Below, piece after piece: positions 8,322 to 29,210 of a stretch of 64,000 bases of DNA. How positions within the stretch are numbered: the first letter of the stretch is position 1; each line of letters opens with the position of its first letter. The notes under the pieces were generated by a model. That model did no database searches, was not told the origin of the DNA, and saw only the letters and a list, made by a program, of their open reading frames with translations. The stretch covers positions 62,001 to 126,000 of IMG/VR virus record IMGVR_UViG_3300033997_000136; one strand, 5' to 3'. The position numbers were made by a program, and so were the translations under genes.

Positions 8322-8335
8322 TTCTATAATCTTAC

Positions 8336-8355
8336 AGATATACATTATCTCTATG
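8336..8355 (+). promoter_or_regulatory. Phage early promoter motif, copy 1
   Basis: AGATA-TACATTAT-CTCTA-TG; consensus ARAYMTAYATYA-N6-TG seen 8 times; resembles the phiKZ early TATATTAC element. Confidence 0.7.
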
Positions 8356-14126: not shown

Positions 14127-14148
14127 ATGTCCTTTTTTATCTTTTTAT

Positions 14149-14168
14149 AAACATACATTATCATTGTG
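14149..14168 (+). promoter_or_regulatory. Early promoter motif
   Basis: AAACA-TACATTAT-CATTG-TG. Confidence 0.7.
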
Positions 14169-14241
14169 TATTAATCACCTGTGTATAAAAACACAGAATG
14201 ACATTATCATCATGGAAGTAGTTTCCATCAGGGAGTTGAAT

Positions 14242-21454: not shown

Positions 21455-21487
21455 GACGGAGGGCAATTGCCCTCCTCTTTATTTTTT
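21449..21487 (+). repeat. 39-bp stop+terminator unit identical to 58590-58628
   Basis: GAATAAGACGGAGGGCAATTGCCCTCCTCTTTATTTTTT at both sites. Confidence 0.9.
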
Positions 21488-21510
21488 TATTTGTTTTTTA
21501 ACAAAAAATC

Positions 21511-21530
21511 AAACCTACATCATCGTTGTG
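21511..21530 (+). promoter_or_regulatory. Early promoter motif
   Basis: AAACC-TACATCAT-CGTTG-TG. Confidence 0.7.
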
Positions 21531-25383: not shown

Positions 25384-25841
25384 ATACACAACAGGTCATT
25401 CTAGACTTACATCCAATTGAACCACTGATGCAAGAACTTGCGGATTTATATCCACCGGGTGCACATTGGTTAGAACGGTTTTGTGTTGAACTTTGTCCAG
25501 ATGTCATGACTGCGTATTACTATCACTTTGATGATCAACCTTATAGCCCAGGGTTTAATTTTGGTGATTCGATTAAGCAAATCGCCGCTATTTCAGTTGT
25601 TGAAAGTGCCACTACGTGGTTACATGAACACCTTGAAGAACATGACATGCTTGAGATGTTTAATGCTGTTTATGACGAACGCGCTATTATTGAACTCATT
25701 GTGTGTATTGTGATTGAACTTGCAGCACCCCTTATTCAACATGCGTATCGGGATAAGTGGGTAGATGTACTTGCAGACACTACGGTATATGTAGAAGAAA
25801 TAAACCGTTACACTGCATGTATTGTTTTTGAATATTATTAA
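25380..25841 (+). CDS. Hypothetical protein
   Basis: Coupled ORF. Confidence 0.7.
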   Translation: MNTQQVILDLHPIEPLMQELADLYPPGAHWLERFCVELCPDVMTAYYYHFDDQPYSPGFNFGDSIKQIAAISVVESATTWLHEHLEEHDMLEMFNAVYDERAIIELIVCIVIELAAPLIQHAYRDKWVDVLADTTVYVEEINRYTACIVFEYY

Positions 25842-25852
25842 AAAGGACTATC

Positions 25853-26449
25853 ATGACTATCAGACCCCTTGTTGTATCATTTGATTTAGATGATACTCTC
25901 TTTAATACGTCTACGTATTTTAAAGAAGAGTTATTAAAAGTAGGTGCACATATCACGGGTGAAGAAGGGTTTTACACCCCTGAAAACACACAAGGTAAAA
26001 TCACTCCTTTATTAGAGTCTGCAGACTTTATGAAAGAAGCGGATATTTATCCTGCGTTTAAAGAACTATCACAGTGGATGAAATGGACGCGTACGATGTA
26101 TCCAACTATTCAGTTTGTTGTGTGTTCTCACCGTGGGTTTCATGAACGTGGCAAAGAGTACAGTCAAATTCAACTGAGCAAACACAATTTACAGTTTGAC
26201 TTTGAGTTTTACATTTGCCATGAAAAAGAACCGTGTAAGTTGGACTTTTTAAATGTTATGTTTAGCGAAACTGTTTATCTACATGTGGATGATAAACCAA
26301 GCCATTCAGCGACGGAGCTTTCAGAACGTATTATTATCGTTGATAAGCCATGGAATCAACACTACACAGGAGCCTATACCCGTGAAACAACAGACACCAT
26401 ATTACCCCATCTCACCAAACGAATCGCCGACTATTATACCGGTGTCTAA
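25853..26449 (+). CDS. HAD-superfamily 5'(3')-deoxyribonucleotidase-like
   Basis: FDLDDTL (motif I), S/T-x-R, K, DDKP, and DKPWN. Confidence 0.8.
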   Translation: MTIRPLVVSFDLDDTLFNTSTYFKEELLKVGAHITGEEGFYTPENTQGKITPLLESADFMKEADIYPAFKELSQWMKWTRTMYPTIQFVVCSHRGFHERGKEYSQIQLSKHNLQFDFEFYICHEKEPCKLDFLNVMFSETVYLHVDDKPSHSATELSERIIIVDKPWNQHYTGAYTRETTDTILPHLTKRIADYYTGV

Positions 26450-26966
26450 TGACCACCCATCGATTGTTCAAATCACAGGGCGTTCTATCGTAAACGAACC
26501 TCTGCGGGCTGTATCTATTCTTCTTGTAGATGAAAGCGAATGTGTGTTGTATTCGTACGAACCTACGGAAGTACAGGTGATGGGAGATATGGAAATTGTG
26601 ATGAAGTTTGCAAAAGAACACATCAATGGTGACTTTAGTTTGTATATCCCTGTAGCAGATAGCACAGTTGGACATTACATGACTGGTGTGTCTCTTCAGT
26701 TAGTTGCACGTAAACGTTCAAACCAATATCTGTATCCACCACAACAACCTGACCATCTGTTAAGTGTGTTTACAAGCCCACCGCAATGTGTACATGGATA
26801 CAATCCGTATGCTGTGTCAAAAGAGTTGACCTCAGTTGTGGATTCTATCCAAACAAAGAACCCAATACTTCATGCTACGCTTTCTGAGTTTAGTGTAGAA
26901 GAGCTAGGGTTGTTGTTTGTAAGTGCGCTCTTTACCATTCCGTTAGACAGACATAGAACACATTAA
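26442..26966 (+). CDS. Hypothetical protein (start uncertain)
   Basis: 3' part of the 26253 ORF; GTG 26442 overlaps the upstream stop. Confidence 0.55.
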   Translation: MSNDHPSIVQITGRSIVNEPLRAVSILLVDESECVLYSYEPTEVQVMGDMEIVMKFAKEHINGDFSLYIPVADSTVGHYMTGVSLQLVARKRSNQYLYPPQQPDHLLSVFTSPPQCVHGYNPYAVSKELTSVVDSIQTKNPILHATLSEFSVEELGLLFVSALFTIPLDRHRTH

Positions 26967-26975
26967 TGTGCCTAT

Positions 26976-27215
26976 GATATGTACGAATACCGTACACTGA
27001 AGTGTACGTGCTTCTTTAACAATTTGGTAAACCACAGACAAACCGATTCGATTCGGAGTAATGCAGTTGTGTATCCACCTCACAGACCACGATGAACCTA
27101 CATGTAGAGTTTTGACACAGGTCGTGTTAGGGGTAACGTAGTGATGCTTGTCACAAGTGATTGTACTTAGAGGAAACTCTGGTGCAGTTGCTTGTGACAT
27201 TATTTTCTTTTTTTC
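26976..27215 (+). ncRNA. Putative structured non-coding RNA of about 230 nt
   Basis: No RBS-led ORF; several hairpins; a 23-bp GAAA-capped stem whose non-Watson-Crick pairs are all G-U on the + strand; TATG at the 5' end and a U-run at the 3' end. Confidence 0.6.
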
Positions 27216-27246
27216 CCTTTTTATTTTTTTGTTTTTATAATTTTAC

Positions 27247-27266
27247 AGATATACATTATTAGTGTG
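27247..27266 (+). promoter_or_regulatory. Early promoter motif
   Basis: AGATA-TACATTAT-TAGTG-TG. Confidence 0.7.
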
Positions 27267-27304
27267 GTAACATCCTGTTAATAACTCATAGAAGAATAGG
27301 GTAT

Positions 27305-27634
27305 ATGGATAGAGAAATCATTGTAGACTTGTATGAGTTTTATGGCGATACAGTGAACGCAAAGTACGCTAAAGATAAGTTAAGTGCCTTACAACTGGTG
27401 GTGCATTCAGCACAAGCAATTGTCAATGGAGACACTACATTTACGTATCGTCCTGAAAAAGACAGTTCACTTAATCTGTTTATGAATCATGTTGTTTATC
27501 ATGTTAAGAAGTTGATGATACAAAACAATGTGATTCGAGTTCAGTTGATTGCATTTGATTTAACAAAAGACAGTATCACCATTCGTGTGACAGCATTGAA
27601 GAAGGTTTCTGATGGAAAAAATACAAGCGATTAA
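27305..27634 (+). CDS. Hypothetical protein
   Basis: First ORF after the promoter. Confidence 0.7.
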   Translation: MDREIIVDLYEFYGDTVNAKYAKDKLSALQLVVHSAQAIVNGDTTFTYRPEKDSSLNLFMNHVVYHVKKLMIQNNVIRVQLIAFDLTKDSITIRVTALKKVSDGKNTSD

Positions 27635-29155: not shown

Positions 29156-29163
29156 GTGTAGTC

Positions 29164-29187
29164 AGGAGTAGGGTATACCCTACTCCT
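29164..29187 (+). terminator. Palindromic hairpin terminator
   Basis: AGGAGTAGGG-TATA-CCCTACTCCT. Confidence 0.75.
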
Positions 29188-29210
29188 CTTTCTATTCACA
29201 AGGAATCATC

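What the first reader, a model, noticed from the sequence alone, without database searches (positions are those of the whole stretch)
26973..27230. Candidate novel ~230-nt structured ncRNA with its own promoter and a tRNA-elbow-like module
This is the largest non-coding gap in the window. Seen: TATG (26973); hairpin CGTACAC-TGAA-GTGTACG (26991-27008); D-loop-like TTTA-ACAATTTGG-TAAA and T-loop-like CCGA-TTCGAT-TCGG (27043-27056) with no anticodon arm between them; CACAGAC twice; hairpin TTTTGACAC/GTGTTAGGG; and a 23-bp stem at 27149-27199 capped by a GAAA tetraloop, with five G-U pairs, one bulge and no true mismatch, followed by a long U-tract. G-U-only deviations indicate selection on + strand RNA structure rather than a DNA palindrome. 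I cannot assign it to a known family. Hypotheses: a tRNA or Y-RNA-like decoy for host anticodon nucleases or sensors, an antitoxin mimic, or a virion/nucleus structural RNA.
Basis: partly seen in the sequence, partly recalled or inferred. Interest (0 to 1): 0.72.

Follow-up and report, generated by a model that had tools for sequence, protein, structure and literature searches.

The report
Conserved structured RNA ending an early phage operon
Between two small genes of an uncultivated phiKZ-like jumbo phage lies a roughly 250-base non-coding stretch, kept almost unchanged across related phages and ending in a very long terminator hairpin; it is most likely a new phage RNA element whose job is still unknown.

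Summary
The sequence features are real. The window is part of a 213-kb metagenomic jumbo phage distantly related to phiKZ/PhiPA3.

**Conservation.** Four related lineages carry the same element at the same place. Against them the window's 26951-27056 is 94-97% identical, while synonymous sites of flanking genes are 51% identical and the upstream protein 67-69%. The stretch is therefore under strong selection.

**Not coding.** A 1-nt indel and a 28-nt deletion break both candidate ORFs, and codon usage is non-coding.

**RNA structure.** Five base pairs changed on both sides, six changed on one side with pairing kept, and many G-U pairs sit on the + strand. This supports structure in the 3' half: a 92-nt irregular hairpin with an expendable tip, then the 23-bp GAAA-capped stem and U-tract, which looks like an intrinsic terminator. 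A conserved promoter for the next gene follows.

**Known families.** Rfam, ARAGORN and a Ro/TROVE search found nothing.

The proposed D-arm is broken in two lineages, the TTTTGACAC hairpin loses to a covarying alternative, and the CACAGAC repeat is not conserved. An own promoter is unproven.

**Best reading.** A conserved structured RNA domain at the 3' end of an early operon, analogous to phiKZ UTR-derived ncRNAs. No usable RNA data exist.

The parts
26442..26966 (+). Upstream gene (174 aa, unknown function; likely GTG start overlapping the stop of the HAD-phosphatase-like gene 25853-26449). The element lies in its 3' untranslated region.
   Evidence: ORF list and translation; codon score 0.21 per codon; relatives 67-69% identical; no family hit.
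26951..27056 (+). Near-invariant 5' half of the element: 94-97% identical to four other lineages, with about 10 variable columns of 106.
   Evidence: Alignments A2 and A5; identity and binomial test against the 51% neutral identity.
26952..26976 (+). Predicted hairpin H1 (CAUAG..CACA-UUAA-UGUG.CUAUG), holding the upstream gene's stop codon (26964-26966) in its loop. The conserved block starts at its 5' base. Alternatively, this stretch is the -25..-1 region of a TATG-type promoter.
   Evidence: RNAalifold. In L012, C26952>U keeps a U-G pair with G26976, and TAA>TAG changes only the loop. In L006, 26970 G>A breaks one pair.
26973..26981 (+). Two overlapping TATG motifs (26973-76, 26978-81). The second contains the ATG of the 38-codon ORF.
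   Evidence: Sequence. Invariant in 5 lineages. In phiKZ, TATG has G as +1 and is necessary but not sufficient (PMC4666361). Genome-wide in + + intergenic regions TATG occurs 38 times against 21 for CATA.
26980..27008 (+). Three-segment set of mutually exclusive perfect hairpins: A 26980-85 (UGUACG), B 26991-97 (CGUACAC), C 27002-08 (GUGUACG). B pairs with either A or C. B:C is followed by a U-rich run.
   Evidence: Folds. B:C plus its tail was flagged as terminator-like. All three segments are invariant, so there is no covariation information.
27043..27056 (+). T-loop-like hairpin CCGA-UUCGAU-UCGG. The only variation is loop G27050<->A.
   Evidence: Not recognised as a tRNA part by ARAGORN or Rfam.
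27057..27148 (+). P2: a 92-nt irregular hairpin with several G-U pairs. Its base helices are conserved. The tip (27089-27116) is variable and deleted in lineage L006.
   Evidence: RNAalifold and pair counts. Doubly compensated pairs: 27085/27123, 27086/27122, 27087/27121 and 27096/27110. One-sided compatible changes: 27062/27143 and 27094/27112. Stability is not above shuffles.
27149..27199 (+). P3: a 23-bp stem with a GAAA tetraloop (27173-76), five G-U pairs and one bulged U. This is the intrinsic-terminator hairpin.
   Evidence: z = -8.5 on +, -3.2 on -. Compensated pair 27153/27195 (A-U to G-C). Compatible one-sided changes at 27158/27190, 27159/27189 and 27165/27183.
27200..27235 (+). U/T-rich tract after P3. 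The window lineage carries a 16-nt T/C-rich insertion (27203-27218) relative to the other lineages.
   Evidence: and 42 (table 4: 16 nt left out at 27203).
27236..27266 (+). Promoter of the downstream gene. It is the best copy in the record of the motif A(C/T)ATACATTAT-N5-TG, which recurs after terminators across the genome.
   Evidence: PWM score 34.8, top of the genome. 96% conserved in relatives.
27305..27634 (+). Downstream gene (109 aa, unknown function).
26943..27200 (-). 85-aa minus-strand ORF, called as a gene in the public JGI annotation. Judged spurious.
   Evidence: Called gene in L018. Codon score -0.105 against 0.35 +/- 0.11 for genes. Frame and start are not conserved: 70 aa with a different N-terminal frame in L003/L008, split in L006.
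26979..27095 (+). 38-codon ORF without a Shine-Dalgarno sequence, in frame with the upstream gene after its stop codon. Judged non-coding, with one caveat.
   Evidence: Codon score -0.18. The 1-nt indel at 27035 shifts the frame after codon 18, yet the nucleotides downstream stay nearly identical. Caveat: the three substitutions in codons 1-18 are all synonymous.

Best explanation
The gap holds a single-copy, strongly conserved, + strand structured RNA domain of about 250 nt (26951-27199, plus a U-tract). It forms the 3' end of the transcript of the upstream gene and of the early-type operon that gene closes.

**Architecture**
- A near-invariant 5' half with small hairpins. These include one that holds the stop codon in its loop, a three-segment set of alternative hairpins, and a T-loop-like hairpin.
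- A 92-nt irregular hairpin whose tip is dispensable.
- An unusually long, G-U-rich, GAAA-capped intrinsic terminator.
- A separate promoter immediately after the terminator, which restarts transcription for the next gene.

**Shown**
- Non-coding status.
- Purifying selection far above the neutral level.
- + strand base pairing in the 3' half.
- Terminator-like anatomy.

**Inferred**
- RNA polymerase reads from the upstream gene into the element and stops at the long hairpin.
- The product then acts as RNA. It either stays on the mRNA or is clipped off as a stable 3'-UTR-derived small RNA protected by the terminator hairpin.
- The invariant 5' half is the part recognised by a partner (protein, RNA or ligand).

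The partner and the biological role are unknown.
For: **Host genome.** The window is part of a 213,150-bp IMG/VR phage record. Its 910-aa virion protein is 26-29% identical to phiKZ-like phages.

**Relatives.** Four other lineages were found through the flanking proteins: L003, L006, L008 and L012. All carry the element at the same place.

**Conservation**
- Identity to the window is 94-97% in 26951-27056, 83-89% in P2 and 90-92% in P3.
- Four-fold synonymous sites in ten flanking genes are 51% identical (n = 600). Sites next to the element are not specially conserved: 4/7 on each side.
- Another intergenic spacer is 79% identical.
- The window-versus-rest split of the flanks is kept inside the element, so the identity is not recent exchange.

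**Non-coding status.** Codon scores are -0.15 to -0.18 (+ ORF) and -0.105 (- ORF), against 0.35 +/- 0.11-0.15 for genes. Frame-breaking indels occur.

**Structure**
- 359 of 362 cells are canonical.
- 5 pairs are doubly compensated and 6 changed on one side with pairing kept.
- Slid controls give 0-1 doubly compensated pairs and 24-45% canonical cells.
- The P3 fold has z = -8.5 on + and -3.2 on -.

**Genome context**
- The usual intergenic plan of this genome is stop codon, terminator, U-tract, promoter motif.
- No strong terminator (of the GC-rich, 8-15-bp kind usual in this genome) lies between the gene and P3. The only candidate is the weak 7-bp hairpin at 26991-27008.
- GC is 0.42-0.44 in the element, against 0.29-0.33 in the following spacer.

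**Precedent.** phiKZ makes a 3'UTR-derived ncRNA that ends in its terminator (PMC8545117; PMC10914365).
Against: **No transcript evidence.** The only 'RNA' runs holding the sequence are probably DNA, at depth 2-3.

**Limited comparative depth**
- Only five lineages are available, effectively the window against four closer ones. The compensatory changes are few events: the three adjacent pairs of helix 27085-88/27120-23 changed on one branch. Hairpin-templated mutation at the DNA level could in principle produce that.
- An R-scape-type test has no power with this set.

**Thermodynamics.** P2 and the 5' half are not more stable than shuffles.

**The 5' half**
- It is invariant, so it carries no covariation.
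- Its two best hairpins are perfect DNA palindromes, without strand bias.

**Possible weak coding signal.** The three substitutions in 26979-27034 are all synonymous in the small ORF's frame.

**No partner or target.** A scan of phage translation-initiation regions was no better than shuffles.
Confidence: 0.6

Rival explanations
1. Independent ncRNA gene. A phiKZ-type TATG promoter at 26973-76 or 26978-81 starts a discrete RNA of about 225-230 nt that ends at P3. The conserved 26951-26975 block is then promoter DNA rather than an RNA hairpin.
For: - TATG with G as +1 is the late-promoter core of phiKZ (PMC4666361).
- Both TATG copies are invariant in five lineages.
- The conserved block begins about 25 nt upstream of the first TATG's G.
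- TATG is modestly enriched on the coding strand of intergenic regions: 38 against 21.
- Element and terminator stay together when a gene is inserted downstream in lineage L003.
Against: - TATG is necessary but not sufficient, and frequent, in phiKZ.
- Everything nearby is invariant too, so TATG conservation is uninformative.
- The TATGs that follow terminators elsewhere in this genome sit in pyrimidine-rich tails, unlike here.
- No match to the phage's recognisable promoter class: PWM best 4.6, against 12 or more for true sites.
- The L012 change at 26952 keeps pairing with 26976, which fits an RNA hairpin.
- No RNA data exist.
Confidence: 0.2
2. The 5' half is mainly a DNA-level site: operator-like palindromes or another protein-binding or replication-related site. 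It would lie next to an ordinary, if long, terminator, and the RNA would have no function of its own.
For: - TGTACG-N5-CGTACA and CGTACAC-N4-GTGTACG are perfect inverted repeats without G-U pairs.
- The 5' half folds no better on + than on - (z = -1.75 against -2.35).
- There is no covariation information there.
- A very AT-rich tract follows the element.
Against: - No other copy of these palindromes or of the element occurs in the 213-kb record.
- The site lies about 250 nt upstream of the next promoter and just downstream of a gene, an odd place for an operator.
- More than 100 contiguous invariant bases is long for protein sites.
- The adjacent 3' half does show + strand RNA constraints.
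- The U-G change in H1 is compatible only on the + strand RNA.
Confidence: 0.1
3. tRNA- or Y-RNA-like decoy. The T-loop-like hairpin and a D-loop-like partner form a tRNA elbow that titrates a host anticodon nuclease, a sensor or a tRNA-binding enzyme.
For: - Hairpin 27043-56 has loop UUCGA(U).
- Its only change among lineages is G<->A at the position that is a purine in tRNA T-loops.
- A GG lies in the proposed D-loop.
- The element sits in an early-type region.
Against: - ARAGORN finds no tRNA or tmRNA in the window or the record.
- Rfam tRNA/YrlA/Y RNA give no hit even at E up to 10.
- The loop has 6 nt rather than 7, and the closing pair is A-U.
- The proposed D-stem is broken by 27029 A>C in L003 and L012.
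- No Ro/TROVE gene is in the record.
- The neighbour first flagged as polynucleotide kinase is a DxDxT HAD phosphatase with no kinase evidence.
Confidence: 0.07
4. The gap is protein-coding. Either the 85-aa minus-strand ORF annotated by JGI is real, or a small + strand peptide (38-53 codons, shared N-terminus MYEYRTLKCTCFFNNLVN) is made by re-initiation after the upstream stop.
For: - JGI's gene caller calls the minus ORF.
- All lineages keep an ATG-started + ORF of 38-53 codons.
- Its three substitutions in codons 1-18 are all synonymous.
Against: - Codon usage is 3-4 SD below that of genes.
- There is no Shine-Dalgarno sequence.
- The 1-nt indel and the 28-nt deletion change frame and length while nucleotides stay almost identical.
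- Synonymous sites are far too conserved for protein-only constraint.
- The minus ORF's start lies inside the terminator stem, and its N-terminal frame differs among lineages.
Confidence: 0.04

Closest known systems
phiKZ 3'UTR_PHIKZ298 ncRNA and other UTR-derived ncRNA candidates of phiKZ (Gerovac et al. 2021, PMC8545117; Putzeys et al. 2024, PMC10914365)
   Same: - Jumbo phage of the same broad group.
- Non-coding, structured RNA located right after a stop codon.
- The last stem-loop is the gene's Rho-independent terminator.
- No Shine-Dalgarno-preceded ORF.
- Function unknown.
   Different: - No sequence or Rfam relationship.
- The element here is about 250 nt, against about 100 nt.
- Its existence as RNA is not shown here.
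- Its support is evolutionary (extreme conservation and covariation), whereas the phiKZ RNAs are supported by Northern blots and Grad-seq, not by conservation.
Bacterial 3'-UTR-derived small RNAs that share the mRNA's intrinsic terminator (reviewed in PMC9438474)
   Same: - The element shares its terminator hairpin and U-tail with the upstream mRNA.
- It has a conserved region upstream of the terminator.
- No recognisable own promoter was found.
   Different: - Those sRNAs are usually 50-100 nt with a short single-stranded seed.
- Here more than 100 nt are invariant.
- No target was found.
- Dependence on Hfq or RNase E is unknown.
Intrinsic (Rho-independent) terminators of this phage and of phiKZ
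   Same: - Stable hairpin followed by a U-tract at the end of an operon and just before the next promoter.
- Stability is strand-specific.
   Different: - The stem has 23 bp with five G-U pairs, against GC-rich stems of 8-15 bp elsewhere in this genome.
- It starts 182 nt after the stop codon instead of within about 20 nt.
- It is preceded by a conserved structured region.
tRNA-like / Y RNA-like (YrlA) RNAs
   Same: A conserved hairpin with a UUCRA-type loop.
   Different: - No cloverleaf and no acceptor or Ro-binding stem recognised.
- The D-arm is not supported.
- No Ro gene was found.
- No model hit.
Promoter-terminator cassettes (PeSLs) of T4-type phages that mediate gene shuffling (PMC2839356, PMC4122927)
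   Same: - A terminator hairpin, T-tract and conserved early-type promoter form a unit.
- Lineage L003 has a whole extra gene inserted at that unit, flanked by repeated T-tract/promoter sequence.
   Different: - PeSLs are repeated many times per genome and do not include a 180-nt conserved upstream RNA domain.
- This element is single-copy.

Membership tests
tRNA / tmRNA | Cloverleaf (or tmRNA) recognised by ARAGORN; match to Rfam tRNA/tmRNA covariance models | tested here: not met
   ARAGORN finds 0 genes in the window and in the whole 213-kb record. There is no Rfam match even at E up to 10.
tRNA-like elbow module | T-arm with a UUCRANN loop plus a D-arm whose pairing is maintained | tested here: inconclusive
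   The T-loop-like hairpin is conserved, with G<->A at the R position. However, its loop has 6 nt and its closing pair is A-U. The proposed D-stem is broken by 27029 A>C in 2 of 5 lineages. Tertiary contact is not testable in silico.
Y RNA / YrlA | Ro (TROVE) protein encoded by the same genome or locus | tested here: not met
   PF05731 gives no match in the record, and the control genomes ring. The record is only about 77% complete.
Y RNA / YrlA | Match to Rfam Y RNA/YrlA models | tested here: not met
Intrinsic terminator | Stable hairpin immediately followed by a U-tract on the transcribed strand | tested here: met
   P3 folds at -32.3 kcal/mol (z = -8.5) on the + strand. The tail has 13 U in the first 15 nt. 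The - strand fold is -15.0. Pairing is maintained by compensatory and G-U/A-U changes.
Intrinsic terminator | RNA 3' ends actually formed there | not testable with these tools
   The available runs are DNA-like and shallow.
3'-UTR-derived sRNA | Lies between a stop codon and that gene's terminator, with no terminator in between | tested here: met
   The only caveat is the weak terminator-like hairpin at 26991-27008.
3'-UTR-derived sRNA | A discrete stable RNA species released by processing or made from an internal promoter | not testable with these tools
   No RNA-seq of an infected host exists. The phage is known only from metagenomes.
Known riboswitch / cis-regulatory leader | Match to a described aptamer or leader family | tested here: not met
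   Rfam 15, at gathering and E-value thresholds, on the window and two relatives.
Protein-coding gene (85-aa - ORF; 38-codon + ORF) | Reading frame and start conserved among relatives; gene-like codon usage | tested here: not met
Independent gene with phiKZ-type late promoter | TATG with G as +1, plus functional flanking determinants | tested here: inconclusive
   TATG is present and invariant. Its sufficiency is unknown (PMC4666361). There is no transcript data.

The most novel reading that the evidence does not exclude
The element is a new class of jumbo-phage RNA with a function of its own. One version is an early-expressed, roughly 230-nt RNA whose invariant 5' half, including a T-loop-like hairpin, binds and titrates a host tRNA-reading factor or defence sensor. 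The other is a translation- or ligand-sensing attenuator: the alternative hairpins next to the stop codon (26980-27008) would decide whether polymerase stops early or reads on to the long terminator.
Probability: 0.12. Interest if true: 0.8.

Novelty: new member of a known kind. Interest (0 to 1): 0.5.

Why it matters
Non-coding RNAs of nucleus-forming jumbo phages are almost unexplored. The few phiKZ candidates were found by transcriptomics and have no known function or conservation data.

This element comes from the opposite direction. A non-coding stretch is kept at 94-97% identity where neutral sites have dropped to 51%, so a sequence-specific function is very likely. That makes it a well-defined target for experiments.

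The analysis also has practical by-products:
- It corrects a probably spurious 85-aa gene call in the public annotation.
- It gives the promoter and terminator grammar of an uncultivated chimallivirus clade.

If the RNA turns out to act on host factors early in infection, it would add an RNA layer to jumbo-phage takeover or counter-defence.

Tried and rejected
**Known RNA families and partners**
- Rfam on the whole window, on the region at E up to 10, and on two relatives gave only chance hits: snoRNA, Plasmodium RUF6 and similar, at E > 0.5.
- ARAGORN on the window and the whole record found nothing.
- A Ro/TROVE search found nothing.

**Searches for more relatives**
- Three flanking proteins and the 200-aa neighbour in viral contigs gave nothing.
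- Two exact 20-22-mers in viral contigs gave nothing.
- The metagenome scan found only a sibling copy identical to the window over the aligned stretch (26940-27196).
- Genome contigs by DNA and by protein gave nothing.
- GenBank phages by blastn gave no match.
- The all-representatives protein search with the 174-aa protein gave only one weak repeat-protein hit.

**Within the genome**
- Paralogues of the element in the record: none.
- Promoter PWM of the phage's own motif at the element: no site.
- Genome-wide search for the TGTACG palindromes as an operator motif: only noise.
- sRNA-target scan against all translation-initiation regions of the phage: no better than shuffles.

**RNA and interaction evidence**
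- Public sequencing runs: the 'RNA' runs are probably DNA at depth 2-3, and the depth spike at 27144-27311 is low-complexity T-tract cross-matching.
- Complex prediction of the RNA with both neighbouring proteins was not folded by the tool and gives no evidence.
- Protein atlas look-ups of the neighbours gave only weak leads, Tubby/LURP-one-like for the 174-aa protein.

**Explanations tested and set aside**
- A homing-endonuclease co-conversion explanation for the high identity. The gene inserted in lineage L003 has no endonuclease signature. Synonymous sites next to the element are not conserved.
- Group I intron, CRISPR-repeat mimic, T-box and tetraloop-receptor resemblances were considered by eye and dropped for lack of any model or motif match.
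Full report
**What the window is.** The window is bases 62001-126000 of a 213,150-bp IMG/VR virus record, estimated about 77% complete. A 910-aa virion protein at 1560-4292 matches virion structural proteins of PhiPA3 and of Ralstonia, Xanthomonas and Burkholderia jumbo phages at 26-29% identity. The genome is therefore a distant phiKZ-like (chimallivirus-type) jumbo phage. It is known only from subsurface, soil, wastewater and drinking-water metagenomes. Almost all genes around the finding are on the + strand and tightly packed.

**The observation.**
- The 23-bp stem at 27149-27199 has a GAAA loop, five G-U pairs and one bulged U. It is reproduced by folding.
- The stem is very stable on the + strand (-32.3 kcal/mol, z = -8.5) and much less so on the - strand (-15.0, z = -3.2).
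- The other hairpins are not thermodynamically unusual. The 5' half gives z = -1.75 and the 92-nt middle hairpin gives z = +0.9.
- With a crude codon-based gene call, the 338-nt gap 26967-27304 is the largest non-coding gap in the window.
- Its GC content (0.42-0.44) is gene-like up to the stem. It drops to 0.29-0.33 afterwards.

**The surrounding grammar.** Intergenic regions of this genome follow a regular plan. A GC-rich hairpin of 8-15 bp sits within about 20 nt of the stop codon. A T-tract follows, and often a conserved motif: A(C/T)ATACATTAT or AAACCTATATCA, followed about 5 nt later by TG.
- A weight matrix built from 16 copies gives its genome-wide top score (34.8) at 27236-27266, just upstream of the next gene. 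The T-rich tract and this motif are therefore the terminator tail and the promoter of gene 27305-27634.
- The gap is unusual in two ways. The terminator begins 182 nt after the stop codon, and its stem is 23 bp and G-U-rich.
- The neighbour at 25853-26449 hit a PHROG named polynucleotide kinase. It begins with a DxDxT motif and is best read as a HAD-type phosphatase. I give it no weight for a tRNA-repair context.

**Relatives.** Searches with flanking proteins in IMG/VR found nothing. The large protein collection gave relatives of the 174-aa and 109-aa proteins, and their contigs were fetched.
- There are five distinct versions of the region:
  - the window (identical over the element's alignment, or the part of it they cover, in L011, L018, L019, L020);
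  - L003 (= L004, L017);
  - L006 (= L005, L007);
  - L008 (= L010);
  - L012 (= L013, L014).
- Gene order is the same in all.
- L003 has an extra 207-aa gene of unknown function inserted between the element's T-tract and the downstream promoter.

**Conservation**
- Window against relatives: 94-97% identity in 26951-27056, 83-89% in 27057-27148, and 90-92% in 27149-27199.
- The upstream protein is only 67-69% identical, and its DNA is about 55-65% identical over most of its length.
- Four-fold synonymous sites of ten flanking genes are 51% identical (n = 600). The synonymous sites closest to the element are at that level: 4 of 7 on each side.
- Another intergenic spacer (29156-29210) is 79% identical.
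- Against a 49% neutral difference rate, 3-6 differences in 105 aligned bases has a probability below 1e-21.
- The differences that do exist separate the window from the other four lineages, just as the flanking genes do. The identity is therefore not a recent exchange.
- The conserved block starts sharply at about 26951, 13 nt before the stop codon.

**Not coding.** Two ORFs cross the gap.
- *The 85-aa minus-strand ORF (26943-27200).* It is called as a gene in the public JGI annotation. Its codon score is -0.105, against 0.35 +/- 0.11 for real genes. Its start codon lies inside the terminator stem. In L003 and L008 it becomes a 70-aa TTG-started ORF with a different N-terminal frame, and in L006 it is split.
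- *The 38-codon + ORF (26979-27095).* It has no Shine-Dalgarno sequence and lies in frame with the upstream gene after its TAA. It scores -0.18. The window has one extra C at 27035, so the peptide after residue 18 is entirely different from that of the relatives, while the nucleotides after the indel remain nearly identical. L006 also lacks 28 nt (27089-27116).
- *Caveat.* The only three substitutions in codons 1-18 (26990, 27024, 27029) are all synonymous in that frame. By chance this is roughly a 2% event, noticed after the fact. Even there, synonymous sites are more conserved than protein constraint alone would explain.

**RNA structure.** RNAalifold on the five sequences and my own pair counts give 359 canonical cells of 362.
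- Five pairs changed on both sides with pairing kept:
  - 27085/27123, 27086/27122 and 27087/27121 (GAC/GUC in the window, UCG/CGA in all others);
  - 27096/27110 (A-U against G-C);
  - 27153/27195 (A-U against G-C).
- Six pairs changed on one side through G-U: 26952/26976, 27062/27143, 27094/27112, 27158/27190, 27159/27189 and 27165/27183.
- Two pairs have a broken cell.
- Sliding the 3' partners by 1-3 columns gives 0-1 double changes and 24-45% canonical cells.
- L006 deletes the 28 nt inside helix 27085-88/27120-23 and leaves a neat UCGC-UUA-GCGA hairpin. The tip is dispensable and the base is kept.
- The many G-U pairs would be A-C mismatches on the other strand. The constraint is on the + strand RNA, the direction of the flanking genes.

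The limits are clear:
- There are only five sequences, and the window is effectively an outgroup to four closer ones.
- The three adjacent compensations are probably one episode.
- P2 is not more stable than shuffles.
- The 5' half is too invariant to show covariation.
- The two best hairpins of the 5' half are perfect palindromes with no strand bias.

- *D-arm.* The stem TTTA/TAAA loses a pair in L003 and L012 (27029 A>C). A small UGG-UAAA-CCA hairpin puts that base in a loop.
- *TTTTGACAC/GTGTTAGGG hairpin.* It is absent in L006 and disrupted in L003, and its 3' arm is used by the covarying helix instead.
- *CACAGAC repeat.* Neither copy is conserved.
- *T-loop-like hairpin (27043-56).* It is conserved, and its single change is G<->A at the position that is a purine in tRNA T-loops. 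This is one transition, so it is weak evidence.
- *Model searches.* ARAGORN finds no tRNA or tmRNA in the window or the record. Rfam finds nothing at gathering thresholds and only chance hits at E up to 10 in the window and two relatives. There is no Ro/TROVE gene.

**Own promoter?** In phiKZ, TATG with G as +1 is the late-promoter core. It is necessary but not sufficient, and it is frequent in the genome (PMC4666361).
- Two TATGs are present here (26973-76, 26978-81) and both are invariant, but so is everything around them.
- In this genome TATG is modestly enriched on the coding strand of intergenic regions: 38 against 21 for its complement. It often sits in the pyrimidine-rich tail of terminators, a context not found here.
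- The phage's recognisable promoter class has no site in or before the element.
- The conserved 26951-26975 block can be read in two ways. It may be the 5' arm and loop of an RNA hairpin that holds the stop codon. The L012 C>U at 26952 keeps a U-G pair, and TAA>TAG falls in the loop. Or it may be promoter DNA upstream of a TATG start. I cannot decide between these without RNA data.

**RNA data.** Runs that hold the sequence were found and laid on the region.
- The two 'RNA-Seq' wastewater runs are judged probably DNA.
- They cover the element with contigs identical to the window at depth 2-3.
- The apparent depth peak at 27144-27311 is made of short T-tract contigs from other organisms.
- One run of a coded organism carries a further relative of the phage.
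- None of this shows or excludes a transcript.

**Other tests without result**
- No paralogue in the record.
- No other copy of the palindromes.
- No better-than-random pairing to phage translation-initiation regions.
- No further relatives in any collection.
- The complex-prediction job was not folded and counts for nothing.

**Mechanism.** What follows is inference from this anatomy.
- The polymerase that transcribes the upstream early-type operon continues past the stop codon. The last recognisable promoter and terminator upstream are near 21455-21520.
- It transcribes the conserved domain and stops at P3 and its U-tract. The next promoter, about 40 nt further on, restarts transcription.
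- The 3' hairpin should protect the RNA from 3' exonucleases. With 23 bp it is also long enough to be an RNase III substrate (inference from general knowledge, not tested).
- The near-invariance of more than 100 nt, much of it predicted unpaired or in small hairpins, points to recognition by a specific partner.
- The RNA may act while attached to the mRNA or after being clipped off as a 3'-UTR-derived RNA. This is open.

*An untested idea.* Segments A (26980-85), B (26991-97) and C (27002-08) form mutually exclusive hairpins directly after the stop codon. B:C is followed by a U-rich run and was flagged as terminator-like. A ribosome stopping at 26964-66 would cover A. This has the logic of an attenuator.

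**Comparison with known systems**
- The closest analogue is the phiKZ 3'UTR_PHIKZ298 ncRNA: about 100 nt, two stem-loops, the second being the terminator. It was seen by Grad-seq and Northern blot and is of unknown function (PMC8545117; re-annotated in PMC10914365). Bacterial 3'-UTR-derived sRNAs are the more general analogue. The architecture is the same, but there is no sequence relationship. This element is more than twice as long, and its evidence is evolutionary rather than transcriptomic.
- It is not a member of any Rfam family.
- The terminator/T-tract/promoter unit, with a gene inserted exactly there in lineage L003, recalls the promoter-terminator cassettes of T4-type phages (PMC2839356, PMC4122927).

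**Verdict**
- The finding is a real, selected, non-coding element. It is most likely a + strand structured RNA that ends an early operon (confidence 0.6).
- I file it as a new member of a known kind: a phage UTR-associated ncRNA candidate.
- Interest is moderate (0.5). The conservation is striking and gives a clean experimental target, but expression, partner and function are unknown and the phage is uncultivated.

Noticed in passing
window 26943-27200 (-), = L018:1702-1959: The public JGI annotation calls an 85-aa minus-strand gene across the gap. Codon usage, frame-breaking indels in relatives and a start codon inside the terminator stem indicate a spurious call.
   Followed up: yes
window 27236-27266, 8325-8352, 14138-14170, 21514, 35223, 40007, 49002 and others across G000: A recurrent promoter-like motif follows terminators: an AT-rich stretch, then A(C/T)ATACATTAT or AAACCTATATCA, then about 5 nt, then TG. 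It marks a long block of small + strand genes. It is probably the early (virion RNA polymerase) promoter class of this phage.
   Followed up: partly
L003:2545-3470 (also L004, L017): One lineage has a 207-aa gene of unknown function inserted exactly between the element's T-tract and the downstream promoter. It comes with a second small terminator (about L003:2625-2660). The insertion is flanked by repeated T-tract/promoter sequence, so this is a gene-shuffling hotspot resembling T4 PeSL cassettes.
   Followed up: partly
window 25853-26449: This gene hit the PHROG 'polynucleotide kinase', but it starts with a DxDxT motif (VSFDLDDTLF). It looks like a HAD-family phosphatase or nucleotidase rather than a kinase.
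   Followed up: partly
window 27203-27218: The window lineage carries a 16-nt T/C-rich insertion in the terminator tail relative to all other lineages.
   Followed up: no
G000:C1 21635-22180, 50370-50775, 151993-152297, 181169-181539, 182467-182754 (GC 0.50), 193187-193629, 195722-196066: Other gaps of about 290-550 nt in the same phage record, outside the window, show no ORF with gene-like codon usage. They may hold further non-coding elements. No tRNA gene was found anywhere in the record.
   Followed up: no
many + + intergenic regions, e.g. window 4326, 7220, 14126, 54097: TATG often sits directly in the pyrimidine-rich tail of terminator hairpins. In + + intergenic regions it occurs 38 times, against 21 for its complement. 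This may be the late-promoter core known from phiKZ, placed right after terminators.
   Followed up: partly
window 26442-26966: The 174-aa upstream protein is an orphan of this small phage clade. A language-model search gives weak Tubby-C/LURP-one-like leads (score 0.89). An exhaustive profile search finds only one 655-aa protein with six repeats similar to residues 36-87.
   Followed up: partly
run X17 ('organism A'), laid on window 25809-27297: A sequencing run labelled with a single organism contains contigs of a further relative of this phage. It has 28 differences and the 16-nt and 1-nt indels across the element. That organism might be a host or carrier. Its name is coded and could not be followed.
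   Followed up: no
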